From Syncephalis fuscata S228 (taxonomy: Eukaryota > Fungi > Zoopagomycota), in NCBI GenBank assembly GCA_025786725.1, contig JAHLTZ010000016.1, forward strand, positions 477,154-541,153: a stretch of 64,000 bases of DNA, given 5' to 3'. Below, piece after piece: positions 3,070 to 60,068 of the stretch. The translations under genes were made by a program, and so were the position numbers. Each line of letters begins with the position of its first letter. Positions within the stretch are counted from its first letter, which is position 1. Under the pieces are notes generated by a model that had not been told where the DNA came from, did not search any database, and saw nothing but the letters and a program-made list of their open reading frames with translations.

Positions 3070-4724
3070 ATGACCTTTCAGCTATTATACCGTTTGCTCT
3101 TACGCAGCTTTCTACTGCTAGTTTTACTGGAAACATGGGCAGGACAGCTAGACGTGCATGCACATGCAACTAGAAATGATGCATCCCATTTAGTAGTTTT
3201 AAAAGGAAAACCAGAAGCACAAACGCTACGTGCTATTTCTAATCATACAAGTCTACCACCGGGTGAGATTAGTATGCAAACAGTGGCCAAATTGCCACAA
3301 GTCATATCAGTGGGCAATCTTCATGTAGTATTGTCGCAACTGTCGGATGACGTTACTTCTGCAGTATCGAATATTGCCGGTGTAAAATATGTCAATCCCA
3401 ATCATCAAGTGCGTGCATTTGGCACAATCGAGCATAACTATGCTAGTAGAAATGCTCATGATAAACATGAACGACGTGCAATAGCGCCAATACCATCAGA
3501 TGAGCCTGATGCTAATAATGGCACTGGTGTAATAATTTATGTGTTGGATACGTAAGCTGATTTATTGTACTGACAAACACATTATATAATAACACATTTT
3601 ATTGTATTTTATATGCTTAAATATCAAGCGGTATTGATATCTATCACACCGATCTAGGCAATCGCGCAACATGGGGCTTTAATGCAATGGACGACGGCGT
3701 AGATAGGGACGAGAGTGGACATGGAACGTTTGTTGCCGGGCTACTTGGTGGCAATCATGTAGGCTACGCAAAAGGCGCGCACCTTACTGCAGTTAAGGCA
3801 AGGCAGAACAGAACAGAATAAACTTTAGTATCTAAATAAATCATAAAGGTTTTGGACAAGTCAGGAGAAGGATCGGTAGAGTCGGTTCTACGTGGCCTAG
3901 AGTATGTCCATAATAATGTTATGGAAGAACCAAATAGGCTAGCAGTGGTCAAGTAAGTTCAAAGCCAAGTGACAATAATATACTGCGTAAACTAATTCAA
4001 TCATAAAACGATGTAGTTTATCTTTAGGTACACCACAAGATGCGCTGCTTAACGAAGCCGTTGCCGAAATGACTCGGGCCGGAATTGTTGTTGTTGTACG
4101 TAACTCATAGCTTAATAATAATTTAAAGAATAATAATAATGATGATGACGGTGGTGGTGGTAGTGGTAATAATGCAATGTTTATTAATTGTTATATTATC
4201 AACGATAGGTCGCCGCAGGCAATGGTGATGACCATGGACATGCCGTCGATGCTTGCGATTACTCACCAGGCAATGCGCCAGAATCCATTACTGTTGGCGC
4301 CACAGATATTGTCGCACAAATCGCGCCCTTTTCTAATTACGGCACTTGTGTAGATCTTTTGGCACCTGGCAATCATGTGCATAGTATTGCAAATACATCA
4401 AATACTACACTAGTGTCGCGCTCTGGCACAAGTTTTGCAGCGCCTGTTGTTGCAGGTGCCGCGGCTTGTGCAATGGCAAGCTTTGGAACGGTCACAAGCA
4501 CTGAAGATATTCGACAGCATTTATTAGATATTGCTGTTAAAGATATTGTAAAAGGCAATCTTCATGGCACGCCCAATATATTTTTACAATCACGAGCTCA
4601 ATTTGTACTCGACAGTTCTATGTCGAATGGTTACCGTAACTATTTTATACCAATTTATATGATGCCAATCAACCTGTCTATTGTTTGTTTACTGTTTTCT
4701 ACGCTTTTATTCATTATTTACTAA
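3070..4724 (+). CDS. Secreted subtilisin-like serine protease (S8A, proteinase K-like), copy 1, 5 exons
   Basis: Signal peptide, I9-like prodomain, catalytic motifs IYVLD(T)G, GHGTFVAG, AAGN and SGTSFAAP, and a hydrophobic C-terminal tail. Includes a GC-AG intron at 3798-3848. Confidence 0.9.
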
Positions 4725-5183
4725 ATAAACTTGCATCTATATAATTTATTATTTCAATTTATGTTTAATGATTTGTATAGTAAGCCATACTATGCAGACA
4801 TAGCCTCATGGTTATAAATGTTTTGCTCCAACACTATGTCACTCGTTTTAAATACTAGCCTAATTAATGTTTGAGTTCCGCCTACTTTTCTATTGTTAAA
4901 CATGGCGGATGTAAGTGTGATTAAGACTGAGAAACAAATAAATCTCTGATAAAACTGTCTTTACTCGCTTGCACCTAAGCAAGTAAAAGTTGCTTAAATA
5001 AACCTTACTTATAAGTAGTGTCTATTCTAGTATCCTAGTTCAACTCTCTTGCTTATCAGTCTACCTTATACTTACTTTGTAGCGTATTACCATCACTCAT
5101 TGATAGCACGTCCAAGCACATTGTTATTACATCTGCTCATTCGTTTAGTCATCGTTATAGTTATTCAATTAATTCGTTACACA

Positions 5184-6770
5184 ATGCGTAGTACTATCTT
5201 TTGTGTAGCGCAATTAAGCGCGCTACTGACGGTTATTTCGTTTTTGGAAATACCACAAGTATACACGGATGCAACACATCTCATTATACTCAAGGAACGC
5301 CCGTCACCAAGGGTGCTTAAGTCATTTGTCACACAGCTTGGTAGTGCGGATCACGCTCAAAACCGTACAGAAAACTTGCAATCTGACCCACGCGTTATTA
5401 GTATTGGTGAGCTACATATACTGCCAACCATGCTTAAGAACGAGGAGGTGAAGAATTGGGAAAACAAGCAAGAGGTCAGCTCAGTAGAGACGGATATAAA
5501 GGTCAAGATGGCTCAGTTACGTACAGTGACCCAGTCTGACCCTCCAAGTTGGGTAAGTGTTTTATTAAATCATCTATTCCTGATTAACAATGCATAATAA
5601 AAAGGGACTGGACCGGATCGACCAACGGAATCTGCCACTTGACAATAAATATAGCTATCCCGCAAGTGCAGGAGATGGCGTGACAGCGTATATTATTGAT
5701 ACGTAAGTACCTGATTAGTTGCTATATTCCCCCTACTAATGCACTTTAAAGCGGAATCGATACAACCAATCCTGATTTTGGTGGCCGTGCAAGTTGGGGC
5801 ACTACTACAATTAATGGCGCACCAAACGCCGATGACAATGGACATGGAACATTTGTCAGCGGTATTGTTGGTGGCAAAACGTATGGCGTGGCAAAAAAAG
5901 TTAACCTTGTTGCCGTCAAGGCAAGTAATGATACATTTAAAAACTAATTTATTTACAATTGTACTGTTACAGTCGCTAGACAGTCAAGGAGAAGGCTATC
6001 TTAGCAATATCCTTAGAGGTATGGAGTGGACATTTAACAACTACCAGAGCCAGCCGAATAAGCGTGCTATTGTCAAGTAAGCAAAACGAGCCACACCGCT
6101 CTGCATCGACTTATCACGCTCTTTAGTATGTCGTTAGGCCTTGTTAAAAGCAAAACAATGAACTCTGCAGTGGCTGAACTAACCAAGGCCGGCATGTTGG
6201 TGGTTGTATGTGTTATCCATTTCTATATGCCCACCACTAACCACATGTATATACTCATGTATTATCCACTAGGTTGCTGCCGGCAATGGCGACGAGCGTG
6301 GCAAGGCAATGGATGCATGCAAGTTTTCACCATCATCAGCACCAGAAGCACTGACGGTGGGAGCCACTGATCGTAACGACGGAGTAACACCATGGTCAAA
6401 TTACGGCGAATGTGTCGATATTTTAGGACCAGGCGAGCGTGTACGCAGCTTGGATTATAAAAATCCAAGTGGTTCCACCGAAGACTCGGGTACTAGCTTC
6501 TCCGCCCCTTATGCTACCGGTGTAGGCGCTTTAGCCATTAGTGCCAACAAAAATACAACATTGCCTGAAGATCTAAAGAAGCTGATTATTGGCGTTTCTA
6601 CAAAAAATGTTATCAAGGGGGATTTACACAAAACGCCTAATCGACTTGTGAACAACGCGATCGACAGTATACCTCTGGCATTAATATCCTCCTCTGGTGA
6701 AAATAAGAACCATGCAAGCTGGAGCATAGCTGGCGCTGTTATATTCCTATCCGTGTGGATGTGGATGTAA
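5184..6770 (+). CDS. Secreted subtilisin-like serine protease (S8A), copy 2, 6 exons
   Basis: Signal [15 protein letters not shown], then [28 protein letters not shown] and SGTSFSAP. C-terminal [19 protein letters not shown] tail. GC-AG intron at 5921-5972. Confidence 0.92.
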
Positions 6771-7361
6771 TAATAATGCGTATTATTCAAATATTTTTCG
6801 CAACCTGATGTTTATTGTGTATGAATATGTACATGTGTATAAGTGCGTACATGATTGTGTGGCGTGTGTCAAAAAGGTGCCACGTTTGTTTCCAAAGCAC
6901 GCATCACTTAACAATAAATAAAATAGGCAATAATGGATCCCAGAGTGATTAATTGCGACTCTTGGCACTAGTACAAAAATCACCATTTCCAAAATAAAAT
7001 GCAAATCTCTATCTCTATCGCCGCCATATCTCACCATCGTTTCCTCAACGTCATTTTTTCAGTCCTATAGCGTTTCATCGCTTATTCGCTCTTGCATAAA
7101 ACTAACAGTGCTTCAAGCTCCATACCAACTTATCTGCGTCACTTGTTTGCGCTGCTACTTGCTTGAATGCCTACTTAGCAATAACTATACTGCATTTTCA
7201 TTAGCATATCGAACTCAATAACATACTCAACTTCTTTTCCACTGACCAGTACCAGAGTCTAGCAACCTATCTACTTGACAATAGGAACTGGTTTATCCGT
7301 TGACTTTGCAGTACAGGTAGCATAGCATCATTCTTTGTGAATACCTTTGCACCTGTATAAC

Positions 7362-8786
7362 ATGCGACTATCTGTCCTATTTTGCAGCGCGCTGGTGCTG
7401 CTAGCAAATTTAGGCGCTGTATCGCCGAAGAGGAACAAGTCCCTGCACTGCCTGGCCCATCAGCTGCTGAGATGAAAGAGGCGATACTCGATCAAATTAT
7501 TGTTTTTGCCAAACAGCCTAGCTCAGAAGCATTGAGTGCACTGGGCCAGCTTGCACTACAGTCACTTGAAAAGCTCGCAAATATGTATATGATTAGTGGT
7601 CAATTTGATGATGCCGTAATAAAGCCGCTTCAAGCTGCTGGCATCATCTCATATACAGAGCCCAACCGACTTGTACGTGCCTCAAATCTCACCATGTCAA
7701 CACAGAACTCACCTGCAAACTGGGCTTTGGAACGTATAGACAAGCGGTATTTGCCACTTAGCAATAGTTTTCACTATCCACCAACTGCTGGCAAGAACGT
7801 TACCGTCTATATCCTAGACACAGGCGTCAATACAAATCATTATGATTTGGGTGGTCGTGCGCGATTTGGCGTTGATTTTATTAACAACAATCAAACAAAA
7901 ACAGATGATCATGGGCATGGTACTTTTGTTGCAGGCCTAATTGGCGGTGGCAAGTACGGAGTTGCCAAGTCATGTTCAATGGTTTCTGTAAAGGTACTGG
8001 ACTCAAATGGAGTAGCACCTACAAATATCATTATCCGTGGCATTCAATATGTGATCAGTCAGCACCAAAAGGATCCAAACAACATGAGTATTCTCAAGTA
8101 AGTACCGCTAATAAATAGATTATAGTCCAGCATGCTGGCAATGATTTACTTATTCTAGTTCACTCATACTAATTACAGTCATACTATTTAGTCTATCATT
8201 GGATTCACCCGTATCTCGTACACTAAATAGCGCTATTATACAGGCCACTCGCGCGAACATTACCGTTGTGGTAGCAGCAGGTAATGGTGACGAACAAGGT
8301 AATCCCCAAAATGCTTGTAATTATTCTCCAGCATCTGCTTCAAATAACTCGGCCGTCATAACGGTTGGCGCGACCGATAAGAGTGATAATCAAGCCAGCT
8401 TTTCAAACTACGGTCCATGCGTTTCATTGTTTGCGCCTGGCGTCAATCTTGTGTCGATATCGAACAAAAATCCCACAGGAATACTTACACTAAGTGGCAC
8501 ATCGTTTGCTGCCCCGCTGGTCTCCGGGTTTGCCGCGTTACTTATGGGCGATAGCGACACACCATTATTACCTGCAGATGTTAAAGCGCAGATTATCAAC
8601 TATACTACACCGAATATTATTAGAAAGCTACAAGCAAACACGCCCAATTCTATGTTATTTGGTAACTTGGTTGCCGCCAAAGCAGGCTTGGATTCATCGG
8701 CAGCAAGTCCATCCTTTTTACGACAGCCTTTGTCAGCTACAGGCGCGCTTGTCATTGCGTCGTTTGCCACACTTTTACTTCTTTAG
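7362..8786 (+). CDS. Secreted subtilisin-like serine protease (S8A), copy 3; apparent 1-nt frameshift near 7408-7420; intron 8098-8191
   Basis: The ATG at 7362 encodes a signal peptide (MRLSVLFCSALVLLANLGAV) in a different frame from the body (IAEEEQ...WALERID...YILDTG...HGHGTFVAG...AAGNG...SGTSFAAP). Hydrophobic C-tail. Confidence 0.88.
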
Positions 8787-10267
8787 TTGTTTATTGTGCT
8801 CCATTACCTCTGTCATTCCTCATTGCATATACCTTCCCAATAACAAAATTTGTTTAGCATTGAATTAATACTATTTGGAAATCAAATGACTAATTTTGAT
8901 AACATTTGTCTAACTGAGCTAGATGCTCGTTCTATTGAAGATGGATCAGGTGGTGGGTTTTATTATGATCACATCATCACATTATATTGCTATTTGATGG
9001 CCAAATGACTGTATTGATTATTTATACATTTAAATTAAGCATTTGTTTTATTGAACATAACGATGGGTGGTGAGTGACGTCAGCCATTAAAATACCTATA
9101 TTTTAGATTTATTATTCAATATGCATATATCCACCATTTACTTACATTATTCCCCTTCTATTTTACACTACTATCTACTACTCTATAGTATACTAAATAC
9201 ACTATATTACTTGTATGTTCCAGTACACTTTGCTCATTCCTCTCATCGCAGTGTATATATACCATAGTGTCAACACCACTCATCATGCTCTTTCCATTGT
9301 ATATCTATTTTATTCTATATCATTTATGCTCGTATAGCCTTGCTCTATTCAAAACTGTTTTTTGTTATTACCTTTATTGTTTACAAGCTTTAGCTTGGTT
9401 CTTTCACTCATTCATGCCTATATGCACACTATAACTTTAGCATTGATAATCGCACACTTTCCCCTGCACATTCATTCTGTTATATATTGTCTCACTATAC
9501 ACTAGCTACGCACTACTTAGCTTTACTAGCACCAGTGCGATAATAGTGGCAGTAGTTGTACTCATTGCTATATAGCATAGACTATATGCGCCATATTCCT
9601 TTCTTCTATTATTTTACTCACTACATTCTTTCTTTCTATTTCTTATTTATTACAATCTATATATACCTATAACAGTAAGTACACCCACTATATGCACGCC
9701 ACGCTTGAGTCTGCCTTTTCTTTCTTTCATACCATTATGCTCGTTTGTTCGCTTTGTTGCTATTGTCCCAGTGAATAGTATTTCATCGGCTATAGTATAC
9801 ACACTATATGCACTTTTATTTTTGCTTATGTTTATCGCCAAATACGCAGTATTGCTTTGCCAATTGCATTGCTATTGAATGACAGACTGTGCATATGTAT
9901 ATAATATATGCATATATTCCTTTTACTATTGAATAGTATTTATAGTCTATAGTTGTATATAGATTGCACCACGCTACTCATCTATGCTTTTGTTGCTACT
10001 CATTGGCTTATGACACAAGTGAATTATTGAATTGTGTTAATAGTATATTATGCATAATAGTAGTAACTAAACCAGTATATTACATGCATACACTATTGCT
10101 AGCGTTGTATATATAATTGTATTTATTATTGTGCGTATGCGTTTGATTATGTGTATGGCGCAATAGTAGATGCGTGTGTATGTATTTGTAGAATGGTCAC
10201 TGCAATTGCTGTAAGCTTTTACACAAACTAGAAATTATGAATAGGTGCAAAAAAATGCCTCCACTTC

Positions 10268-10385
10268 AACTACGTTCATTGCGCCTAGAAAGCACCGGAT
10301 CCCGTCCGATCTCCGAAGTTAAGTTAGGCCGCGCTTCTGTAGTACTGCGGTGGGGGACCACGCGGGAATGAGAAGTAATGTAGTT
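10268..10385 (+). rRNA. 5S rRNA gene
   Basis: 118 nt. Helix I pairs AACTACGTT with AATGTAGTT. Conserved 5S signatures GATCCCGTCCGATCTCCGAAGTTAAG and AGTACTGCGGTGGGGGACCACGCGGGAA (box A, box C, loop E). Confidence 0.96.
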
Positions 10386-10393
10386 CCAAGCTA

Positions 10394-10465
10394 TCTCTGT
10401 TAGTATAGTGGCAAGTATACCCGCCTGTCACGCGGGAGACCGGGGTTCAATTCCCCGACAGAGAG
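10394..10465 (+). tRNA. tRNA-Asp (GTC), intronless
   Basis: 72-nt cloverleaf: acceptor TCTCTGT/ACAGAGA plus discriminator G, D-arm TAGTATAGTGG, anticodon arm CCCGC-CTGTCAC-GCGGG, T-arm CGGGGTTCAATTCCCCG. Confidence 0.98.
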
Positions 10466-10468
10466 CTC

Positions 10469-10473
10469 TTTTT
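10469..10473 (+). terminator. RNA polymerase III T-run terminator after tRNA-Asp (second T5 at 10491-10495)
   Basis: TTTTT lies 3 nt after the tRNA 3' end. There is no T-run between the 5S and the tRNA. Confidence 0.8.
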
Positions 10474-12160
10474 GCGCCGTAGCGCTTTACTTTTTGCACC
10501 TTGCGATGGTTATTATTTTGCTTAAGCTGCAGCGGGAAGATCGCGCGCGATTTTACCGAAAACTACAGGTGCGTATGTGCATTTTTGTTCCAGTGTCGGA
10601 CTGTATACACTGAACTATAGTTATTTATATTCATTCCATTTTAACCAAGTCATTAAAGATTTAAAGGTATGTTTAATTGAACTAGGAATACAGTTATTAT
10701 ACTATAATTGGTATTAAATAGATTACCTATTAACATTATTATGCCGTGATATGATAATCATTTACGAATTGATCCATATAAATTATACGGTTGGTTTAAT
10801 GTTTTTTGCTTATATTTTTGTTAAATAAACAGCCAATAAGATTATATAAGCATTGATGCTAAAGATATAGTATTTTATTTGTATATGACTAAATAAATTA
10901 TGTTAAAATCTGAATACATATAACTAACAACAAATAGGTGGTTTTTAATGGAAAAGCGTGTTTATTAAAATAGATAATATTATAAATAAAGCGAATATAC
11001 AAAATATATTGTATAAATAGTAATAAAGCTATAATATAGATTATTGAATAAGAGTAATAATTTGACCTTTATAATCAATACAATTAAAAGTGGATAACAG
11101 CATTTATCAATAATAATTGACTGCTAGACTATACAGTATATACAGTAGAATGAGTTTATAACAAAAAAGCATGAGCAATAGTACGTAAAGTATAAAATAC
11201 ATGGCTCAATAAATACAATAAATAAAGTGTGTTGAAGCATATGGTGCATATAATATATTTAGTATATTGTAGAGTAATATACAGTAACAATTACATGAGT
11301 GGATAGAAGATATATGAGCACAAGTTAATGATGGTGCTGATGATTTGGTTGTTAATAATATTCACCACCAAGTTTCATGTTTGATAGAACGAACATCTAG
11401 TTCAATTGAGTAGATATTATTAAAACAATCACTTGGCACTCAAATCATATGAAATGGACAATAGACTATTAAAGCAACATGTGTTTTAGTTTAAAATGAT
11501 ATACAATAGAACTGGGCATATTATTACTATTTCAACAGCTTAGGAATAGCAAACAGGCTGGAAAAACAATATGCACTTTTAATAAATATGGTATACACTA
11601 TCGTATACCTAAATTGTCGTAATGATATTATATTGCATCAATCTAATGGTAAATAAACTGCAACGGTTGCTTTAATTCAAATCAACAAGCTACAATTGCA
11701 TTAAAGCAAACGTAAAAAAATGTTTATTGATTAATAAAAGTGTGTACTGGTTATGCTAATTGCATATGGTAACCGAATATGCTAAACGCTTGTTTTGCGC
11801 ATATTCAATCAAATGATATAACTGGATGTTTAAAATATTGAGTAATTTTAATAATTATGACCGTAAAGACGATCACGATAACTGTGATGGGAACTAGTCA
11901 TATTTGATCTAATTTTAATTACTTAATATGGTAATTGCATTAATTATATTTTATTGATGTGCTATTTGGTGGCTGTAATAATCTGGTATTTGTTGCGGTG
12001 ACACAGGTAAATACCCCCTCGCGCTCCTCTTCTACCGCCTTTTTTTCTCCTGACTACCCATTTCCTTCGCTCTGATTCACTATTCTATTTTACCACGCTA
12101 CCTATCTACACAAAACGAACCATTTACTAGTCCAGAACACGAATATCTAAACATATCTTA

Positions 12161-13573
12161 ATGTGGTCGATCAGATTTTCACGGCATTACGACCAACCAA
12201 TACTACTACCAATTTGTTTTTTACTGATATTATGTAGCTGCTTGTTCGCCGGTGTTTACGGCCAAGAAGCTGTAAAACAAAGTGCCAAAAGTAAGCTGAT
12301 TGTATTCAAACAACGGCCTGATCCAAGTATACTTGAGCAGCATGGAATACAGTTGCTATCATTAGGAAATATGTATTATGCGGCTGGAGAGTTTGCCGAT
12401 AATGTCATGGAGCAATTAAATCAGCTTGGCATAATAGACTGGTCCGAAGACAACAACTTTATCAAACTAGATGTCGGCCCGCCCGCCGTTCAGCTCAACG
12501 TATCCAGCTGGGGACTTGACCGTATTGACCAGCATAAACTTCCGTTGGACGGTGTCTATAACTACCCGTCTTCTGGCGGCAAAGGCGTATATGTATTCAT
12601 TATGGATACAGGTGTGAATGTAGATCATGTTGATTTTGGTGGTCGGGCAGTGAATGGCGCTATTCTAGGCGGTTCGGCAGGAAAAAGTCCCACCGATGAT
12701 CAGGGACATGGTACATTTGTTGCAGGAGTCATAGGCGGAAGCCATTACGGCGTAGCAAAAAATGCAACGCTTATTTCTGTCAAGATATTGAACAAAAGAG
12801 GCATTGGCACTTCTAGTGATGTTATAGCAGGCCTAGCCTGGATATTAGAACAACACTTGGCTTCAAAAGAAAAAATGTCGATTATAAAGTGTGTTTTATT
12901 AATTAGTAGTAGAATCAAATTGCTAACTTGTAAATTAGTCTATCATTAGGGGCAGATTTTAATCGGTCTATTAATCGAGCTGTTGAACAGATTATTCAAC
13001 GGGGTATTGCTGTTGTGGTAAGTGGCTGCCTAATGATCAATCAATCAATTGACACTTACGTTGTTCTAGGTGGCGGCCGGTAATGGAGATGAAAATCGTG
13101 TTCCACAAGATGCGTGTAATTTCTCGCCATCCTCTTCACCGCAAGTCATTACCGTCGGCGCTACTTCAAAAACCGATACAGTAGCCTCCTTTTCAAATTA
13201 TGGTAAATGTGTTACAATTTTTGCGCCAGGTGTATCCATTACTTCCTTATCGTCTACCGATCCTGCTGGTGTTGTCACTATGAGCGGAACATCGTTTGCA
13301 GCACCCTTTGTTACTGGAGTTGTGGCCTTATTGCTAGGAGAGGCAGGACCTCTTCCACCCGCTGAGATCAAACGTCGTCTGGTACTTGGTTCTACACAGG
13401 GCTCGATAAGCGGATTAAGAAAGGGGGATGGCACACCTAATTTATTACTCTACAACAATATCGACACTTCGCCGTATAAAGGAAAATCCAACGGAGGATC
13501 CAAACTATTCGATTACACTTGTTTGTCGACACTATTTGCATGTTTGTGGCTTGCTACTGCCATAGAACTATAA
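12161..13573 (+). CDS. Secreted subtilisin-like serine protease (S8A), copy 4, 3 exons
   Basis: Signal peptide, SWGLDRIDQ, FIMDTG, QGHGTFVAG, AAGNG and SGTSFAAP. C-terminal GKSNGG...LSTLFACLWLATAIEL tail. Confidence 0.93.
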
Positions 13574-14673
13574 CATATTTATATATGTATAACCAACGTC
13601 AGTAGCGTTTTTTATTTTATACCAATGATCTATAACGGGATTAATCAAAAGCCACTTGCTACAAAGATTTTTATTTTATATGCTTGATTAACCATTATGT
13701 CATTGTTATGCTGAATTTTATCTATCACGTCAACCAATTACTAATAGTTACGTAGTAATTATGATAGAGTGGATATAAATAGTTTGCAAACTCTTTTAAT
13801 GAATATTATTTACATCGATTCACATATTGTGGCTACTATCAAAGTGTTTAATCGATCATTATTATCAATAACACTGTAGTGAAACAGAGTGTAGCTAAAT
13901 GGTTTATTGGTAAAAATCTAACAATACTTTTATTTAGTTTAAACACAAGCTATTTCCGAACTATTAGCAATATTGGTATTTAATTCTATCAATGAATATA
14001 TTGCTTGCATTTAAAGGTAGCAAGTAATGTTTTGGTTATTGATAATTTGTATGGGTGGTCAAACTGGTAGGCAGTAAACTAGTATTGGTAACTTGGCATT
14101 GGCCATTTAATGTATAAATGTCGTATTTGTAAGCAAGTACTGTAAATTATTACTTAATTTTAGCAACAAATTGTAGAATATATGGCTATAAAATATGTAA
14201 TATTATTAAGCCATAGTAACACTGAATAACATTGTATTATTATTACAGCATATAAATTGTTGTATTTACAAATTAGATGACGTTGATCGTATTGCCATGT
14301 CCATGCATTCAATTGTAATTATTTTTAGCTATTTATTAGCAAGAATTCCAAGGACATGACCTCAAATAGCATGGCTGTGTTACCAATATAGCCATAAGTT
14401 GCTTCAATTGTGCGCAGAGTCATCCTTTGCATTTCCAGTTTACGTATGAGTCAGTCAATAACGAAGCGCGTTGATTCGCACACCAGCTCTCTACACTATC
14501 TGTTCTTTCAACTCACACGCACACTTGGTATAGCTTATTGTAGCACTCCGCTTCACACCGCAACCAGTCTTTGCTCTCTTACACACCGCTGATTGTTCAA
14601 ACGAATTCTTTAATTCAGCATTCATACTCCTTATTGTTCATTTGTAGTTTAACATTGATCCTGGGCCGACATC

Positions 14674-16545
14674 ATGTTCCCTGGTGCTCAGTATCATGCC
14701 ACGTATGGCAAACCGTCCAATCAGCCAGCGGGAGGTGGCTACCCACCGCCACCGATGGGATATCCTGGCCAGCCTTCTCCTATGAACAGTGGAGGTGGCT
14801 ATCCACCACCACAGCAGCAAATGCCGGGTTCTGGCGGCTATCCACCGCCACAGTCGATGCCTGGATCTAACACATATCCGCCACCACCGACTCAAATGCC
14901 TGGAGGAGGACCACCACCGCCTTATGCACCACCACACCAAATGCCTGGTGCAAATAACATGTATCCACCACCACCTAATAATGGTGGCTATCCACCAACT
15001 ACTAGTCCACCAGGTGGTATGTATCCACCGCCAGGCGGTAATGGCTATCCGCCACCTAATGGGCCACCAGGTGGTAATGCATATCCACCACCTAATGGAC
15101 CACCAGGCGGTAATGCATATCCGCCGCCTAATGGACCACCAGGTGGTATGTATCCACCACCAGGCGGTAATGCATATCCGCCACCTAATAGTCCACCAGG
15201 AGGTAATGCTTATCCACCGCCACCAGGCGGTAATGGTTATCTGCCACCACCGCCACCTAGTGGAGGATATCCGGGCCAGGTTGGAGGAGGCAATAGGCCA
15301 GGTGCAGGTAATCAAGGCTATGGACCACCACCACCACAGCAGCAATATCAGCAGCCACCGCCACAGCAGTATCAGCAGCAGTATGGCAATGTTCAAGTAT
15401 CCAATTGTACTGGCCGGCGTAGAGCATTGCTCATTGGTATTAACTACGTAGGACAGGATGGAGAGCTGCGAGGTATGTAAATATATGTTATTTAATTGTA
15501 AATTAATCAAATATTCTTTTACGTGGTTTTAGGCTGTATTAATGATGTACGCAATATAAAGCAATTTTTAATAGAACTGCACAATTTCCGTGAATGTGAT
15601 ATGGTTGTGTTGACGGATGATCAACACGACCCTCGCTGTTCTCCTACCCGCGCCAATATGATTGCTGGTATGCGCTGGTTAGTGAATGGCGCACAGCCAA
15701 ACGATTCATACTTTTTCCATTACAGCGGTCATGGTGGACAGGTAGGTGATAAAGAAGTGTGTATTATTAAATGGAATATGTAATAACTATAAATTAACTA
15801 CTTATAGGTGCGTGACACAGATGGAGATGAATCCGATGGATTCGATGAAACTATTTTACCATTGGATTACAAGAGTGCCGGGCAAATAGTAGATGATGTA
15901 AATGAATATTGATCAATAGTCAACTAGTGGCTGATTAGATTACTATAGGAAATTAATGCCATTATGGTACGTCCATTGCCACCAGGCTGTCGATTGACGG
16001 CTATTTTTGATTCTTGCCACTCGGGTACAGCAATGGATTTGCCTTTTCTTTATAATGAAATGGGCCAGCTAGTCAAGTCAAATAACAAGCAAAAGGTGAC
16101 GCAGTCATTGCAACAAGCCTCGCAACAATATATGTCGGGTAATCTTATGGGTGCGGTTGCTGCCCTTACTTCAAGTCTACAGAATATGCAAGGTAGTGGG
16201 CAAGCCGCTAAGATTACACAAGAGACGCGTGCATCGATGGGGGATGTTATTATGTTCTCGGGGTAAGTTTCTCCATCTCAGCCTTTGCTGTTTTACTAAT
16301 ATAGATTCTTAACCGGAAAATACAGTTGTATGGACTCGCAAACGTCGGCCGATACAAGCGTTCAAGGATTTGGTGCTACAGGCGCTATGTCATACGCCTT
16401 TATCACTGCAATGAGGCAGAATCCGCGTCAAACGTATACCATGTTATTGGGCAACTTGCGCGGTATTCTTAATGGTAAATACTCTCAAAAGCCTCAAATG
16501 TCAACTGGTCGTCATATGGATATGAATACGTGGTTTATTATGTAA
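14674..16545 (+). CDS. MCA1: Type I metacaspase with a long Pro/Gly/Tyr/Asn/Gln-rich prodomain; 5 exons
   Basis: SNCTGRRRALLIGINY, LRGCINDV, FHYSGHGGQ (catalytic His), DGFDETI, IFDSCHSG (catalytic Cys), GAMSYAF and QKPQMS. Confidence 0.96.
14734..15380 (+). repeat. Coding minisatellite in the metacaspase prodomain (GGNAYPPPNGPP-like units, 24-36 nt)
   Basis: Repeated TATCCACCGCCA/CCAGGCGGTAAT units with about 15 YPPP-type motifs. Confidence 0.85.
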
Positions 16546-28929: not shown

Positions 28930-29005
28930 ATTCAAATCACTATAATTTGATGACTAATGTCATTCACCATCCACCATCATGTTCAATAGATTAAATGGTA
29001 TTAAA
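28930..29005 (-). repeat. Dispersed copy of the repeat in the left arm of the 5S-flanking inverted repeat (similar to ~9030-9100)
   Basis: Reverse complement TATTGAACATGATGGTGGATGGTGAATGACATTAGTCATCAAA versus 9049+ TATTGAACATAACGATGGGTGGTGAGTGACGTCAGCCATTAAA. Confidence 0.65.
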
Positions 29006-29392
29006 ATAATCGGTGGCAGGCAAATGCTGCAAATGCGCGGTTAGGTCCTACGGACCGTTGTCTTACTCAAGCTAATAAATTTGAAACCAAAATGTTATTA
29101 AAATAGTCATTTTAACCATAAATCATGCTAAATGGCTAATAATGTTTAATTAAACTTTATAATAGTGTTAAATGGCACACAATATTTTATACAATGATGC
29201 ATTTTATTTAATTTAATTAACAAGTACTAAAAATTAAAAGTTAAAAATGAAATGGTACATAGTATGTGTATATTAGTGGAATAACACTAACACAATCAAA
29301 TAGAACAATTAACTAAATAATTATTGATATCATTGCTAAAATAGCTAACATGGCTGTAATTGTAGTGAATGTAACTCATTGTAATATGCTAG

Positions 29393-29497
29393 TATTCAAT
29401 CAATCTTTCTACACATAACCAACAACAACAATGACCAACCTCAAATGTTTCAAAAAAAAATCAAATAGTACGTTATGTTATGTTATTTAAATCAATC
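29393..29497 (+). repeat. Dispersed ~105-bp repeat, copy 1 (copy 2 at 59965-60068)
   Basis: TATTCAATCAATCTTTCTACACAT..CCAACAACAACAA..CCTCA.ATGTT.CAAA..ATCAAATAGTAC..TTATTTAAATCAAT is shared by both copies. Confidence 0.85.
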
Positions 29498-29705
29498 TAA
29501 TCAAATCATTACGATCGATTGCGTAAAAAGATTTATTGCGTTAAAGTAAGGGGCACAAAGTAGGTGTCAATTTCGTTTTGTTTACCTTTGACACTCTTGG
29601 CATTACTGGTCTTTTTTCTTGGCTTTACTTATCTTATTTCTCGGTCGTTCCTCCACTCTTTTGTTATATTGTATTGTGTAGTTTTGTTTTTTCTTTACCG
29701 GTGGG

Positions 29706-54276: not shown

Positions 54277-57200
54277 TCATTGACTTCCAGATGTAGCCGT
54301 CATAATCGGCGCATAATATCGCTTTATGCGATTACCGGAAATTGTGCTTCGCATCCGCGTACCATCAAGCTCAGTCAACTCATATACTCCCTTGTTGGGT
54401 CTACCAACCACTATATATGGTCCCATCCATCTTGGAGTAAGTTTAGCATCCGTCTTACGTATGGGTCTATTATCTCGAAGTAATACCATCTCTCCTATCT
54501 TAACAGGTCCCTTCCTAACATTCTGCTTCTTGTCGTAATACATCTTATTATTCATCCTAGACTTATCTAACTTCACTCCTGCTTCCTCCCTATCCCATGC
54601 GGTTGATAATAATTGTCTAGCCCGCATACTTAATAATTCCTCAGTCGTCATTTCTTTCTTCCACTGTAAGGTAAGCCAAGTTTCTTCATCTATGTCAAAC
54701 GGCAACACACAATCTTGTCCGTATACCAGCTGATATGGGCTCCGCTGAGTTGTACGCTTAGTGGTAATTCTGTCGGCCCACAACACAGCGTGCAAATACT
54801 TAGGCCAGTTTGCGTAATCTTCTCCTACTATTTTTACCAGTCCACCCATTAGTTCCTGATGTCCTCGTTCAATCATTCCATTTGCTTGGGGGTGATAGGC
54901 TGTTGTGAAGTTAATGCGAATTCCGTCCTTAACAGCTACATGACGTATCAACAGTCCATAAAGTTCACCTCGATCTGCTACTACCTCACTAGGTATACCG
55001 AACCGACATATAACATCTTCATATAAAAATTTGTATGCTTCTACCGCGTTATTTTTACACAGCGCTCTGGCTTCTACCCATCCACTGAAGTCGTCCCTGG
55101 CCACTGCTAAATATATTTCACCCGTCGTGGCTTCTGGAAGTCTAACTAAATCGAATCCAATGCGTTTGAACAATGTAGACCCAATAAACGGTTTTAGCTC
55201 TTCTACTTGTCCTTTCCTTTGCGTACGCTGACATATGTCACATCTTTTCACCACTTCTTTGCAAGTGTTGTACATCCCGTACCAATAAAATCGATCACTG
55301 CACAACCTATATGTTGCTTCTACTCCTCTATGGGCAAATGGATGTCCATCGTGCACCATCGTTGTCACACGCAATTGTTCTTCTTCTTCATCTATGACTC
55401 GCTTAGGCATTCCTGTCTTCGCTCGCCGAAATAATAATCCATCGCTAATAAAAAACTTCTTCAACTGAGTTCTAATCCTCTTCTTGTTGCTATCATTACA
55501 GTCGTTGTGCATGCAACCATGCTCGAGAAAATACAATAAATAATAATAGGGCGACCTAGCTGTCATTTTATCAGTATTAACTTGTTTGACACTAGTCACT
55601 CCAAATAATTCATCACCGCTGACGTCCTCGATGTGATAGTTCCATAACACCTTGTCATCTTCATCATCTTCATCTGTCAACATTTCTTGTCCCATGTCAA
55701 CACGACTAAGCGCATCAGCTACTACGTTCTTATCACCCGGAATATGACGTATTTCATAATCAAATAACGAAAGGTAAGCTACCCATCGACTTGCTGCATC
55801 ATTAGGTAAATCAGGCTTTCTCAGCATACCGATGACAGGTCTAGCGTCTGTCTCAATGATAAATTTCACACCATGCACATATTTCCTCATTTTCTTCACC
55901 ATCTGATATAAACCGAATAATTCTCGTTTGACTTGTGCATATTGTCTCTGCGCACTGTTAAATAAACAACTGTCATACCGCACAGCATACTTCACTCCTT
56001 CTTCATCGCATTGTCCCAACACAGCGCCAGCACCAACAGGACTAGCATCTACTGTTAAGATAAGTGGTCGATTGTCGTCACCATACACCGGCGGTCGTAT
56101 GACTGGTCTTTCACTAATACTTCGTTTTAGCGCATCGAATGCTCGTTGTTGTTCACCTTTCCAGTGAAATACTACTTTCTTCTTCTGTAGATAATACAAT
56201 GGCTCGGCGATCGTAGAGAAGTGAGGAATAAGCACTCGGTAGAATGCACAACAGGCCACAAATGCTCGTACTTGCTTCTTATCGACTGGTGTTGGCCATT
56301 GCGTAATCTTAACCGTCTTATCCGGAGTTACAGTTCTTCCTAGTTGGGTACACTGGTAACCTAACACTTCCACCTCATCCATACCAAATCTGCATTTCTT
56401 TCCACTGACTGTTATTCCCGCCTTACTCAAAGCCTTTAACACTTTTACTACGTCAGCTACATGATCAAACACAAACGCTCTCACTCCTGGCAATACAATA
56501 CTTTCATTCTTCTCCACCGATCCTTTAACTATCCCGTCGTCCACGAATATGCCTACTGTATGCGGCATATACTCACTCAGTATCTTATTTACGATCCGCT
56601 GAAACACTCCGACACTATTACACCAACCCATCGGTAACCGTGTCATCCTCACCAGTCCAATCGGCGTCATCAATGAGAATATATCACGATCACGATTGTC
56701 GACAGGGATTTGATCGTAACCGGAATATAGATCAAACGTAGATATAATAGATCTACCTGACACGTCTTCAGTAAGTTCTTCTGACAGCGGCGGTGCATTG
56801 GCATTCTTGATACTAACAGAATTGGCTTGTTGTAGGTCTTGTATGAATCGTAACTTAGATCCATCTTTCTTAGCAATCACAAACCAGCGATTACTATAAG
56901 CACCAGTACTTGGCTCAATAATTCCGCTATTCATCTTTTCCCGCAATAACTCTACTACTCTACTGAATGTTGCTCTTGGTATCGGGATCGAAGCTTGCGT
57001 CCATGGCACATGCGGTACAGTTGGTATTCTTACAGGTGGTTCTATTTCCGCCTTAAGCTTACCCATCTCTTCGTCGTTGAATGCAAAAACTTCGTCTACA
57101 GAGCGTAATTGCTCAATGAAGTACGCGGTCTCTTCTTCTGTTAATTGACCGTTTCCAATAATCATGTCCGCTATACGCTCGCCAGTCAATCTTGACTTGC

Positions 57201-58251
57201 TGCTCTCAGCTCGTTCTTCGTCTTCAGCTTCTTCTCCGTTTGGTACTGCCACGGCGATTGGTAACTTCTTCTTTCCGACCGGCTTGTATTTAGCGGCATA
57301 AACGGACGCAGTATTACCTGTTGTTACTGATTCACGCATGGTAATCGTACCTAACACTATTTCGTCCTCACTCTCTTCTTCTCGTAGCACCGTAACACTG
57401 TTCACATTCTTACGTTGGTCTTGCTGGCCTCTACCACTGGCTGATACCATTGTAGGAGCCGCAGGGAACTTAGCCGCGCTTCGGCCATCAGTTATGTGTA
57501 CCCACGCTCTTCCGTCTTCTCGTTTGACCTCCCATAACGCTTCTTCTAACCAAGGCATTCCAACCAACGCATCGAACGGTGCTCCATCTACAACTATTAG
57601 ATGTGCGTTTATCGTTACTCCTCCAATGGTCACTGGTACGTTGATACACATGCCTCTAGACTTAGACGCTGTACCAGAAGCATTACCCATCGACCATGCT
57701 CGCGCCGCATCCAATGGTAGACTACCAATCTGGTCATATAACTTGCCAGATATTACACTTATTTCAGCACCAGGATCGATTTGGATTTCTACCGGCTCTC
57801 CTGCCACTCGTCCCGTCACTTTAGCTGTTGGCCTAGCTACTATAGTGCCGTCTATCGTTGACAATCCGTCTACATACACCACGGCTTGTTGTACCATTGT
57901 ATCGATAGGCACCTTCTTACGACTGACCAACTCAGCCATCTTCTTTCTGGCAACAGACGATGTTGACAGGTAATCTTGTAGCGGCATCGTCACCTGCGCG
58001 CTACGTAGCAGCTTATCGACAGTGCCATCCACATCGGCTCCTTCCTCGATGACAGATCGGTATTGATGCGTGGCTGGTGGCCGCGCCTGCCTTTCCGTCA
58101 TACTACCAGCTTCACGGGTTTCTACTGGCACCGCTTCCGACGCTTGACGAGTGCCTACACGTGCCGTTTCATATTGACCTCGGCTATATGTTCTACATCC
58201 TCTACTACGATTTCTGGCTCTATAGTCGTTAACTGAACATCGCTTTCCCAA
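54277..58251 (-). CDS. Gypsy pol polyprotein (aspartic protease, RT, RNase H, integrase with GPY/F motif); true 5' start uncertain
   Basis: IDPGAEISVI (PR), DLYSGYDQ/RLPMGW/FVDD (RT), VDAS..ELFG..ETD (RH), HDGHPFAH..CDIC plus the DDE core and WMGPY (IN). Confidence 0.95.
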   Translation of the reverse strand: MGKRCSVNDYRARNRSRGCRTYSRGQYETARVGTRQASEAVPVETREAGSMTERQARPPATHQYRSVIEEGADVDGTVDKLLRSAQVTMPLQDYLSTSSVARKKMAELVSRKKVPIDTMVQQAVVYVDGLSTIDGTIVARPTAKVTGRVAGEPVEIQIDPGAEISVISGKLYDQIGSLPLDAARAWSMGNASGTASKSRGMCINVPVTIGGVTINAHLIVVDGAPFDALVGMPWLEEALWEVKREDGRAWVHITDGRSAAKFPAAPTMVSASGRGQQDQRKNVNSVTVLREEESEDEIVLGTITMRESVTTGNTASVYAAKYKPVGKKKLPIAVAVPNGEEAEDEERAESSKSRLTGERIADMIIGNGQLTEEETAYFIEQLRSVDEVFAFNDEEMGKLKAEIEPPVRIPTVPHVPWTQASIPIPRATFSRVVELLREKMNSGIIEPSTGAYSNRWFVIAKKDGSKLRFIQDLQQANSVSIKNANAPPLSEELTEDVSGRSIISTFDLYSGYDQIPVDNRDRDIFSLMTPIGLVRMTRLPMGWCNSVGVFQRIVNKILSEYMPHTVGIFVDDGIVKGSVEKNESIVLPGVRAFVFDHVADVVKVLKALSKAGITVSGKKCRFGMDEVEVLGYQCTQLGRTVTPDKTVKITQWPTPVDKKQVRAFVACCAFYRVLIPHFSTIAEPLYYLQKKKVVFHWKGEQQRAFDALKRSISERPVIRPPVYGDDNRPLILTVDASPVGAGAVLGQCDEEGVKYAVRYDSCLFNSAQRQYAQVKRELFGLYQMVKKMRKYVHGVKFIIETDARPVIGMLRKPDLPNDAASRWVAYLSLFDYEIRHIPGDKNVVADALSRVDMGQEMLTDEDDEDDKVLWNYHIEDVSGDELFGVTSVKQVNTDKMTARSPYYYLLYFLEHGCMHNDCNDSNKKRIRTQLKKFFISDGLLFRRAKTGMPKRVIDEEEEQLRVTTMVHDGHPFAHRGVEATYRLCSDRFYWYGMYNTCKEVVKRCDICQRTQRKGQVEELKPFIGSTLFKRIGFDLVRLPEATTGEIYLAVARDDFSGWVEARALCKNNAVEAYKFLYEDVICRFGIPSEVVADRGELYGLLIRHVAVKDGIRINFTTAYHPQANGMIERGHQELMGGLVKIVGEDYANWPKYLHAVLWADRITTKRTTQRSPYQLVYGQDCVLPFDIDEETWLTLQWKKEMTTEELLSMRARQLLSTAWDREEAGVKLDKSRMNNKMYYDKKQNVRKGPVKIGEMVLLRDNRPIRKTDAKLTPRWMGPYIVVGRPNKGVYELTELDGTRMRSTISGNRIKRYYAPIMTATSGSQ

Positions 58252-59316: not shown

Positions 59317-59616
59317 CCTGAAAAGGATTTAAGTGTACGCTTAAAGTGAGAACTAAGATAGTAATTAACACGACACCTCAACTCTGAGATGTATACGATC
59401 ACACGAATAGACTCGACAAGTACTCGGACTTGCTTTAAAATAAACGACTAAATATAACTTAAACGTGAACTGCTCCTGTTCTTTTTTATTTAATTATACG
59501 CGCACTATTCATCTTATTTATATTAAAAGCGCGCCATGCTTAGAGTGGCAAAGCCGAGCTATGTGTTCATCAGCTAAAATTAGTAAAATTGGCACCAGCA
59601 CATTTCCTTTACCACA
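59276..59616 (-). repeat. 5' LTR (341 bp)
   Basis: Differs from the 3' LTR only by 3 nt of T-run indels. Confidence 0.97.
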
Positions 59617-59964
59617 ATACTACATCCAACATTAATTAATTCATGTATAATTATCAATACAATAATGTAATTAATTAGTTATCTTTATTATTGCGTTGAT
59701 ACATATACATTGTCATTATGATATTAATTGTTTAAAATGTCATTTATTTAGTCAGATTGACTATAGGGAAAGTGGCTGTTTAATAAACGATTTTTATAAT
59801 AATTATAGCAATCTTGATCTTACAGCACAAATATGCCCAAAATACAATAGTAGAATATCAGAAAATAGAAGAGACCATTTAGATGCAACAATCCATGTTG
59901 TACATAGATGCAATAGCAACAAATGCGAAATGACATGAAATCACAATCATATGGCTTTTATTAA

Positions 59965-60068
59965 TATTCAATCAATCTTTCTACACATGGCCAACAACAA
60001 CAACAACGATCAGCCTCAGATGTTCCAAATAGATCAAATAGTACATCATATTATTTATTTAAATCAAT
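59965..60068 (+). repeat. Dispersed ~105-bp repeat, copy 2 (copy 1 at 29393-29497)
   Basis: Shares the sequence described for copy 1. Confidence 0.85.

What the first reader, a model, noticed from the sequence alone, without database searches (positions are those of the whole stretch)
10268..10473. 5S rRNA fused head-to-tail to tRNA-Asp: probable dicistronic Pol III unit in 5S-then-tRNA order
Seen in sequence: a structurally intact 5S gene ends at 10385, then an 8-nt spacer (CCAAGCTA) with no T-run, then an intact tRNA-Asp, then the only terminator. The gene is solitary and not in an rDNA array. Established: Pol III needs a T-run to terminate, and dicistronic tRNA-5S genes are known in Yarrowia lipolytica with the tRNA upstream. 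Inference: a single ~200-nt precursor in the opposite order, in which RNase P cleavage at the tRNA 5' end would release the 5S 3' end. The tRNA's internal A/B boxes might also help recruit TFIIIC. This would be a distinct way of dispersing and maturing 5S rRNA.
Basis: partly seen in the sequence, partly recalled or inferred. Interest (0 to 1): 0.85.

Follow-up and report, generated by a model that had tools for sequence, protein, structure and literature searches.

The report
5S rRNA gene fused to tRNA
In the mycoparasitic fungus Syncephalis fuscata, an intact 5S ribosomal RNA gene runs without a stop signal into a tRNA gene; the same layout recurs elsewhere in this genome and in a sister species, so the two RNAs are very probably made as one transcript and then cut apart.

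Summary
Rfam finds a full-length 5S gene (10268-10386, 106 bits), a 7-nt spacer, and tRNA-Asp(GTC) (10394-10465). No run of four or more Ts occurs before TTTTT at 10469-10473.

The window is the last 64 kb of Syncephalis fuscata contig JAHLTZ010000016.1. The juxtaposition is not chance:
- The neighbouring region of S. plumigaleata carries the same 5S, 7-nt spacer, tRNA-Asp and T5. The spacer keeps its length but not its sequence, and the 5S shows compensatory helix changes.
- Two more S. fuscata loci carry the identical 5S, a 6-nt spacer and tRNA-Gly(GCC).
- All four 5S genes seen in about 178 kb of Syncephalis DNA are fused this way, although three of the four units were found by looking for them.

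The best reading is a 5S-led dicistronic Pol III gene. Transcription would start at a TFIIIA-type 5S promoter, RNase P would cut at the tRNA 5' end, and an exonuclease would trim the 6-8 nt 5S trailer.

I could obtain no transcript evidence. It is unknown whether every 5S copy in the genome is fused.

This is the reverse of the known Yarrowia-type tRNA-5S genes. It mirrors engineered 5S-tRNA-sgRNA cassettes. I rate it a new variant of a known kind, of moderate to high interest.

The parts
9496..10267 (+). Upstream flank shared with the other two S. fuscata 5S-tRNA units. It is part of the duplicated module and has no known function.
   Evidence: BLASTN shows 66-70% identity to the regions directly upstream of the 5S in L126 and L127. 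In the roughly 140 kb of S. fuscata DNA examined, it occurs only beside 5S units.
10232..10238 (+). A/T-rich TATA-like element (AAATTAT) at -36 to -30 from the 5S start. It is a candidate TFIIIB site.
   Evidence: This is read from the sequence. An A/T-rich element lies between about -39 and -26 in all four units (alignment A2). Its function is inferred.
10256..10267 (+). Motif TGCCTCCACTTC immediately upstream of the 5S. It is nearly identical in the two S. fuscata 5S-tRNA-Gly units.
   Evidence: Alignment A2. It is not conserved in S. plumigaleata. Its function is unknown.
10268..10386 (+). 5S rRNA gene, full length. Helix I pairs 10268-10276 with 10377-10385.
   Evidence: RF00001 at 106.3 bits. 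The fold is the canonical three-way junction. It is identical to the 5S of L126 and L127 except for the last base.
10387..10393 (+). Spacer CAAGCTA with no T-run. It would be the 3' trailer of the 5S and the 5' leader of the tRNA.
   Evidence: Spacer length is kept at 6-7 nt in all four units but the sequence is not.
10394..10465 (+). tRNA-Asp(GTC) gene. The A box TAGTATAGTGG is at 10401-10411 and the B box GTTCAATTC is at 10445-10453.
   Evidence: RF00005 at 62.2 bits and ARAGORN. It is 100% identical in S. plumigaleata. The boxes match the consensus TRGYnnAnnnG and GWTCRAnnC quoted in PMC2566860.
10469..10473 (+). First Pol III terminator (TTTTT), 3 nt after the tRNA.
   Evidence: It is conserved as T5 in S. 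plumigaleata and as T4 in the Gly units.
10491..10495 (+). Second, back-up T-run (TTTTT), within a direct repeat of CTTTTTGC(G/A)CC.
   Evidence: repeat D9. A second T-run also follows the first in the other three units.

Best explanation
This is a natural dicistronic RNA polymerase III gene in the order 5S rRNA then tRNA. It belongs to a small dispersed family in Syncephalis, with tRNA-Asp(GTC) or tRNA-Gly(GCC) as the partner. The proposed mechanism has five steps. (1) TFIIIA binds the internal control region of the 5S gene and, through TFIIIC, places TFIIIB on the A/T-rich element about 30 bp upstream. Pol III then starts at the first base of the 5S (inferred). (2) The 5S is not followed by a T-run, so Pol III reads through the 6-7 nt spacer and the tRNA and stops at the T4-T5 run just after the tRNA. 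This follows from the established T-run rule together with the sequence. (3) The roughly 200-nt precursor folds as two independent modules, as predicted by folding. (4) RNase P cuts at the tRNA 5' end and releases a 5S carrying a 6-8 nt 3' trailer. A Rex1-type 3'-5' exonuclease trims the trailer back to helix I, as happens for ordinary yeast 5S precursors (inferred). (5) The tRNA 3' trailer is removed and CCA is added as usual. The tRNA's own A and B boxes may also support some independent initiation, but the DNA where TFIIIB would then sit is the GC-rich 3' part of the 5S.
For: Anatomy: searches show an intact 5S, an intact tRNA, a 7-nt spacer and no T4 before position 10469.

Conservation: S. 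plumigaleata has the same unit in the same gene neighbourhood. The tRNA is 100% identical, the spacer length is kept while 5 of its 7 positions differ, and T5 follows the tRNA.

Recurrence: two further S. fuscata units on other contigs have an identical 5S, a 6-nt spacer, tRNA-Gly(GCC) and T4 GC T4. Every 5S seen (4 of 4) is fused, and every tRNA seen (4 of 4) sits behind a 5S, in about 178 kb.

Functional 5S: the 5S is identical across paralogous loci whose flanks are only 66-84% identical. Between the two species there are 16 differences, including 3 fully compensatory pairs.

Folding: the 201-nt read-through RNA folds as a 5S Y-shape plus a cloverleaf.

Baseline: in a metagenome sample, eukaryote-type 5S genes almost always have T4 within 20 nt of their 3' end.

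Precedent: in Yarrowia tRNA-5S genes and in S. pombe tandem tRNA genes, the leader gene's promoter drives the pair (PMC2566860). Engineered 5S gene-tRNA-sgRNA cassettes work in fungi with RNase P and RNase Z processing (PMC8542335).
Against: There is no RNA evidence of any kind: no junction-spanning reads, no mapped 5S 3' ends and no ChIP data. The sample is small and biased, because three of the four units were found by looking for a 5S or for this locus. Solitary 5S genes with their own terminators, or rDNA-linked 5S genes, may exist elsewhere in the genome. Non-canonical Pol III termination is documented in human (PMC3141230) and cannot be excluded at the TTT present at the 5S end in three of the four units. 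The presence and state of TFIIIA in Syncephalis was not checked. The z-score of the precursor fold is unremarkable (-1.2).
Confidence: 0.75

Rival explanations
1. There are two overlapping but independent Pol III genes. The tRNA would be transcribed mainly from its own A and B boxes, starting inside the 3' end of the 5S. The 5S would end by non-canonical termination or pausing near its 3' end. The tight spacing would then be a by-product of compaction or of shared chromatin, not a processing strategy.
For: The tRNA has consensus A and B boxes. Three of the four units have TTT at the 5S end. Non-canonical terminators exist in human (PMC3141230).
Against: The window copy has only TT at the 5S end. 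TFIIIB would have to sit on the GC-rich 5S 3' half, which Acker et al. argue disfavours binding. In S. pombe tandem tRNA genes the downstream gene depends on the leader's promoter. Spacer length is held at 6-7 nt across species and partners while its sequence drifts. That pattern fits a processing constraint better than it fits accident.
Confidence: 0.15
2. This is a chance or neutral juxtaposition, or the 5S is an inactive pseudogene. The real 5S genes would lie elsewhere, for example in the rDNA repeat or in a tandem array. The fused copies would be relics carried along by segmental duplication.
For: The copies sit in a duplicated module with about 0.75-1.3 kb of shared flank in repeat-rich intergenic DNA. 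The genome-wide 5S complement is unknown.
Against: The 5S is full length at 106 bits. It is identical in three loci whose flanks have diverged by 16-34%. It is conserved with compensatory changes in a second species. The arrangement is retained at the corresponding locus in that species. A pseudogene would have drifted along with its flanks.
Confidence: 0.05
3. This is a 5S-derived SINE or another retroposed composite element, that is, a 5S head plus a tRNA-related body spread by retroposition.
For: Truncated 5S plus tRNA-like composites, which look like SINEs, were common among the metagenome hits.
Against: Here both genes are full length and canonical, there is no tail after the tRNA, and no target-site duplication was found. 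The homology between copies extends about 0.75-1.3 kb upstream of the 5S start, outside any Pol III transcript.
Confidence: 0.02

Closest known systems
[quoted passage not shown]
   Same: In both cases a dispersed 5S gene is fused head to tail to a tRNA gene a few nucleotides away. There is no T-run between them and a terminator follows the second gene. The arrangement recurs with several tRNA partners, and tRNA-Gly(GCC) is a partner in both lineages.
   Different: The order is reversed. In the yeasts the tRNA leads, so its A and B boxes drive transcription and TFIIIA becomes dispensable. RNase Z cleavage at the tRNA 3' end then defines the 5S 5' end. In Syncephalis the 5S leads, so a TFIIIA-type promoter is expected to be required, and RNase P cleavage would define the 5S 3' side. 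The lineage is also different: Zoopagomycota here, Saccharomycotina there.
Engineered 5S rRNA-tRNA-sgRNA expression cassettes used for CRISPR in fungi (for example Humicola insolens, PMC8542335; Rhodotorula toruloides, papers listed)
   Same: The order and logic are the same. A 5S gene without its terminator acts as the Pol III promoter, a tRNA follows directly, and RNase P and RNase Z cut it out.
   Different: The cassettes are artificial and carry a guide RNA after the tRNA. Their 5S moiety is a disposable promoter. In Syncephalis it appears to be the cell's working 5S rRNA gene.
Tandem tRNA-tRNA genes (S. pombe Ser-Met and hemiascomycete pairs) and plant tRNA-Gly(GCC)-snoRNA genes, as reviewed in PMC2566860
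   Same: These are also Pol III dicistrons in which the leader gene's promoter drives both RNAs and tRNA-processing nucleases separate them.
   Different: In all of them the leader is a tRNA with a type 2 promoter. Here the leader is a 5S gene with a type 1 promoter.
Dense polycistronic Pol III clusters in uncultured marine eukaryotes (metagenome contig Ga0310345_10026741 = L084)
   Same: L084 has a 5S (173-291), an 8-nt spacer without T4, tRNA-Gly(TCC) (300-371) and then T8.
   Different: In L084 the pair is one element of a 4.8-kb block holding about 30 tRNAs, at least five 5S genes, an SRP RNA and a U2, with many tRNAs only 1-8 nt apart. That organism appears to use polycistronic Pol III units as its general style. 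The organism is unidentified.

Membership tests
5S rRNA gene (Rfam RF00001) | A full-length match to the covariance model above the gathering score, with a three-helix-junction fold. | tested here: met
   The match scores 106.3 bits against a threshold of 38 and covers model positions 1-120. The consensus fold is kept.
5S rRNA gene (Rfam RF00001) | Evidence of functional constraint, meaning it is not a pseudogene. | tested here: met
   The gene is identical in three paralogous loci whose flanks are 66-84% identical. Three pairs differ in a fully compensatory way from S. plumigaleata.
5S rRNA gene (Rfam RF00001) | The gene's own T-run terminator directly after the 3' end, as is usual for eukaryotic 5S genes. 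| tested here: not met
   There is no T4 between 10268 and 10468. In the metagenome sample nearly all eukaryote-type 5S genes have T4 within 20 nt.
tRNA-Asp(GTC) gene | A cloverleaf, a GTC anticodon and consensus A and B boxes. | tested here: met
   RF00005 scores 62.2 bits. ARAGORN calls Asp GTC. The boxes were read from the sequence. The gene is 100% conserved in S. plumigaleata.
Dicistronic Pol III gene | Two Pol III genes on the same strand, a few nucleotides apart, with no terminator between them and a terminator after the second. | tested here: met
   for the window unit. for the other three units.
Dicistronic Pol III gene | The arrangement is recurrent or conserved and so is not a single accident. 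| tested here: met
   There are three units in S. fuscata and one in S. plumigaleata. The genome-wide proportion was not determined.
Dicistronic Pol III gene | A single primary transcript spanning both genes. | not testable with these tools
   No RNA data for Syncephalis could be reached. This needs RT-PCR, northern blots or total-RNA sequencing.
Yarrowia-type tRNA-5S fusion (PMC2566860) | The tRNA is the leader, so 5S expression is independent of TFIIIA. | tested here: not met
   The order is 5S then tRNA in all four units. TFIIIA dependence was not tested.
5S-derived SINE | A 5S-related head (often truncated) joined to a non-5S body and tail, with copy homology confined to the transcribed element. 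| tested here: not met
   The 5S and the tRNA are both full length, and nothing follows the tRNA except T-runs. Homology between copies lies upstream of the 5S.

The most novel reading that the evidence does not exclude
In Syncephalis, and perhaps more widely in Zoopagales, all or most nuclear 5S rRNA genes are leader genes of 5S-tRNA dicistrons. If so, 5S 3'-end formation routinely depends on RNase P instead of on Pol III termination. A set of abundant tRNAs (Asp-GTC, Gly-GCC and possibly others) would be produced from a TFIIIA-dependent type 1 promoter, tying the supply of those tRNAs to 5S and ribosome production. This would be the mirror image of the Yarrowia solution and a second, independent origin of 5S/tRNA gene fusion in fungi.
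Probability: 0.35. Interest if true: 0.72.

Novelty: new variant of a known kind. Interest (0 to 1): 0.62.

Why it matters
Eukaryotic Pol III genes are normally single units. The few known natural dicistrons all have a tRNA as leader.

A conserved, recurrent 5S-led unit would be the first natural case in which a type 1, TFIIIA-dependent promoter drives a tRNA. It would also be the first in which RNase P defines the 3' side of 5S rRNA.

The unit offers a natural test bed for three questions:
- How TFIIIA/TFIIIC complexes on the 5S interact with TFIIIC on the adjacent tRNA.
- How 5S 3' ends are made without a terminator.
- Whether fusing 5S and tRNA genes arose more than once in fungi.

On the practical side, it supplies a native template for Pol III guide-RNA cassettes in early-diverging fungi. 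It also flags two mis-annotated "hypothetical proteins" in the S. fuscata genome.

Tried and rejected
- **Target-site duplications or terminal repeats around the unit.** I found only short A/T-rich chance repeats and the duplicated terminator motif. Retroposition was rejected.
- **Generic metagenome scan for a eukaryotic 5S followed by a B box.** It was capped at 120 loci. It gave no Syncephalis relative, one good analogue (L084), two weaker ones (L106, L019), many ordinary 5S genes with terminators, and SINE-like composites.
- **Exact look-up of a window protein to find the genome.** Nothing was on record. The organism was identified through a subtilase exon instead.
- **Random sampling of further Syncephalis DNA (L123, L124, L125; 52 kb).** It held no 5S and no tRNA that Rfam accepts. 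ARAGORN's single intron-containing tRNA-Val call in L123 was not confirmed.
- **Antisense spurious-ORF searches.** The 35-aa ORF was too short for the tool. The 40-aa stop-free stretch found one mis-annotated protein, and its cluster mate gave the third unit. The representative-library search added only antisense ORFs of tandem 5S arrays from other organisms. ORFs annotated in the shared upstream flank are singletons.
- **Scan of bacterial and archaeal genome contigs for the Syncephalis-type 5S motif.** It returned five eukaryotic contaminant contigs in MAGs. None had a tRNA within 10 nt of the 5S.
- **Literature searches for a natural 5S-then-tRNA gene.** None was found in the open-access library searched.
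- **Spliced gene models.** Protein queries from spliced genes were single exons given by reference.

Full report
**1. What is in the window**

Rfam finds exactly two RNA genes in the 64 kb. [quoted passage not shown] The other is a tRNA at 10394-10465 on the + strand, scoring 62.2 bits. ARAGORN calls the tRNA as tRNA-Asp with anticodon GTC. A permissive Rfam scan adds nothing credible.

The sequence shows the following:
- 5S helix I pairs 10268-10276 with 10377-10385.
- A 7-nt spacer, CAAGCTA, follows.
- The tRNA begins at T10394 and ends with discriminator G10465.
- The first run of four or more Ts after the 5S start is TTTTT at 10469-10473. A second TTTTT lies at 10491-10495, inside a short direct repeat.

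The tRNA carries consensus A and B boxes at 10401-10411 and 10445-10453.

**2. Whose genome it is**

A sugar-transporter exon pointed to Syncephalis. A subtilase exon beside the unit then hit a Syncephalis fuscata protein at 98% identity. Fetching that gene's contig shows that locus L122 equals window 2407-23573 at 100% identity. The window is therefore the last 64 kb of contig JAHLTZ010000016.1 of assembly GCA_025786725.1. S. fuscata belongs to Zoopagomycota, order Zoopagales, and is a mycoparasite.

The unit sits in a 3.4-kb A/T-rich intergenic region. It lies between tandem subtilase paralogues and upstream of a metacaspase gene.

**3. It is conserved in a second species**

The corresponding region of S. 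plumigaleata (GCA_025201365.1, locus L121) has the same neighbours: subtilases, a metacaspase, and Ecl1-domain and AD-domain genes. It contains one 5S (4950-4832, minus strand; 100.5 bits), a 7-nt spacer and tRNA-Asp(GTC) (4824-4753), followed by T5 and then T6.
- The tRNA is 100% identical to the window's tRNA.
- The spacer keeps its length but differs at 5 of 7 positions (ACTGCAA against CAAGCTA).
- The unit is inverted relative to the flanking genes, and a peptidase S9 gene lies beside it, so there has been a local rearrangement.
- The two 5S sequences differ at 16 of 119 positions. These include three fully compensatory base-pair changes, at pairs 20-58, 68-107 and 69-106.

That pattern is what a functional RNA gene shows. 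The fusion therefore predates the split of the two species, whose neighbouring subtilase orthologue (P0123) is about 74% identical to the window's over the aligned part.

**4. It recurs in the same genome with another tRNA**

No DNA-level search of fungal genomes was available. I therefore translated the stop-free antisense frame across the junction and searched it as a protein. It hit a 65-aa "hypothetical protein" of S. fuscata, KAI9597102.1. Its 90% cluster contains a second one, KAI9598553.1. Both are spurious ORFs lying antisense to further units:

| Locus | Contig | 5S | tRNA-Gly(GCC) |
|---|---|---|---|
| L126 | JAHLTZ010000008.1 | 10254-10136 | 10129-10059 |
| L127 | JAHLTZ010000003.1 | 10296-10178 | 10171-10101 |

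Each has a 6-nt spacer (CAGTAT) without T4, followed by TTTT GC TTTT.

The three S. fuscata 5S genes are identical except for the last base. Their flanks are only 66-84% identical.

In all the Syncephalis DNA I could examine, about 140 kb of S. fuscata and 38 kb of S. plumigaleata, every 5S gene (4 of 4) is followed by a tRNA and every Rfam-supported tRNA (4 of 4) is preceded by a 5S.

This count is biased. The window was chosen for the unit, L121 was fetched as its counterpart in the sister species, and L126 and L127 were found through their 5S. The peptide match lay in the 5S part, not the tRNA part, although annotation of the ORF required the downstream DNA to be free of stop codons. The 52 kb sampled without reference to a 5S (35 kb of it from S. 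fuscata) held neither gene type.

**5. How the copies spread**

Homology between the three S. fuscata loci does not stop at the 5S start. It continues for about 0.75-1.3 kb upstream, is patchy at 50-90%, and ends at or just after the tRNA. The proximal 770 nt (window 9496-10267) was seen only next to 5S units. Further upstream, window 8883-9490 is a more widely scattered repeat.

The copies therefore arose by duplication of DNA segments, not by retroposition of a Pol III transcript. Afterwards the 5S was held identical, by selection or by gene conversion, while the flanks drifted. How the tRNA partner came to differ (Asp or Gly) is unresolved. The two tRNAs are identical at all but four positions from 27 to 65, yet their acceptor and D arms are unrelated.

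**6. Most likely mechanism**

What is shown:
- The 5S has no terminator of its own.
- The only T-runs follow the tRNA.
- All four units have an A/T-rich, TATA-like element between about -39 and -26 from the 5S start.
- The DNA 30 bp upstream of the tRNA is the GC-rich 3' half of the 5S.
- The 201-nt read-through RNA is predicted to fold as an independent 5S Y-shape plus a cloverleaf.

What is established elsewhere:
- Pol III terminates at T-runs.
- In S. pombe tandem tRNA genes and in Yarrowia tRNA-5S genes, the leader's promoter drives both RNAs (PMC2566860).
- Engineered 5S gene-tRNA-sgRNA cassettes are transcribed and processed by RNase P and RNase Z in filamentous fungi (PMC8542335).
- Yeast 5S with a short 3' extension is tolerated and is normally trimmed by Rex1 (cited).

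What I infer: Pol III starts at the 5S through a type 1 promoter (TFIIIA-dependent), reads through to the T-run after the tRNA, and RNase P separates the two RNAs. An exonuclease then removes the 6-8 nt 5S trailer. Unlike in Yarrowia, this order does not free the 5S from TFIIIA. If anything, it makes the tRNA depend on the 5S promoter.

This is possible but untested. The A box lies 134 bp downstream of the 5S start, which is far for TFIIIB placement.

I put about 0.75 on the dicistronic reading. About 0.15 goes to two largely independent overlapping genes. The pseudogene or chance reading and the SINE reading get very little.

**7. Comparison with what is known**

Natural fusions reported so far are tRNA-then-5S, in Yarrowia (48 of 108 copies), Trichomonascus (all copies) and Blastobotrys. 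Six full-text searches found no natural 5S-then-tRNA gene in any eukaryote. The library covers open-access papers only.

The capped metagenome sample shows that the layout is not unique to Syncephalis. Contig L084, from an unidentified marine eukaryote, has a 5S, an 8-nt spacer, tRNA-Gly(TCC) and T8, inside a very dense polycistronic Pol III cluster. L106 and L019 are weaker candidates. Among eukaryote-type 5S genes in that sample, a T4 within 20 nt of the 3' end is otherwise the rule.

**8. Verdict**

The feature is real, and it is conserved and recurrent. It is best classed as a new variant (5S as leader) of a known kind (dicistronic Pol III genes). What is missing is RNA evidence and a genome-wide census. 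Both are simple to obtain outside this tool set.

Noticed in passing
L126:10001-10198 and L127:10001-10240 (S. fuscata contigs JAHLTZ010000008.1 and JAHLTZ010000003.1): The annotated 'hypothetical proteins' KAI9597102.1 (65 aa) and KAI9598553.1 (79 aa) are ORFs lying antisense to a 5S-tRNA-Gly unit. They are almost certainly mis-annotations. Whether transcript evidence led to these gene models is unknown.
   Followed up: partly
L084:1-4843 (metagenome contig Ga0310345_10026741): This is an extremely dense Pol III/snRNA gene block from an unidentified marine eukaryote. It holds at least five 5S genes, about 30 tRNAs (many only 1-8 nt apart, for example three tRNAs at 451-677 with one terminator), an SRP RNA (1117-1382) and a U2 (4634-4826). 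L117, L128 and L131 look similar.
   Followed up: partly
Metagenome loci L007/L028, L090, L094, L107, L116, L017/L070 and others: These carry partial 5S matches (roughly model positions 34-96) joined directly to tRNA-like sequence that ARAGORN and Rfam do not accept as tRNA. They look like 5S-derived SINE-type repeats from various uncultured eukaryotes.
   Followed up: no
window 5049-13573 and 14674-16545; L121: There is a tandem array of subtilase (peptidase S8) paralogues followed by a metacaspase. The array is shared with S. plumigaleata, which has an extra peptidase S9 gene and the 5S-tRNA unit in inverted orientation. Secreted proteases are plausible mycoparasitism genes.
   Followed up: partly
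window 14638-15510: The proline/glycine/tyrosine-rich N-terminal low-complexity region of the metacaspase produces long overlapping ORFs in three frames on both strands. Only the + strand ATG frame (14674-15480) continues into the caspase domain exons.
   Followed up: no
window 54277-58251 (-) and 59616-60064: This is a Ty3/gypsy-type retrotransposon pol ORF of 1324 aa with protease, RT, RNase H and integrase domains. An adjacent repeat of about 450 nt (possibly the LTR) is also present in L124, L126 and L127 at 78-86% identity. The element is not next to any Pol III gene.
   Followed up: partly
window 8883-9490 and about 28943-29534; L126 15457-17408; L127 3353-3924 and 11206-11714: An A/T-rich dispersed repeat family occurs in several copies and orientations in S. 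fuscata intergenic DNA. One copy lies just upstream of the 5S-associated flank.
   Followed up: no
window 10394-10465 compared with L126 10129-10059: S. fuscata tRNA-Asp(GTC) and tRNA-Gly(GCC) are identical at all but four positions between nucleotides 27 and 65 (anticodon arm, variable loop and T arm). Their acceptor and D arms are unrelated.
   Followed up: no
L128-L132 (contigs filed under bacterial MAGs in GTDB): All five contigs are eukaryotic contamination. L129 and L132 carry eukaryotic LSU and SSU rRNA with a 5S in the intergenic spacer. L128 and L131 carry 5S plus tRNA trains, and L131 also has U2 and U6.
   Followed up: partly
L013, L029, L035, L050, L063, L076, L080, L098, L102, L105: These hold a group of lower-scoring 5S-like genes (about 40-69 bits with my HMM), often as two copies about 190 nt apart and without T-runs. 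They are probably not eukaryotic nuclear 5S genes. They matched the scan pattern by chance of motif.
   Followed up: no
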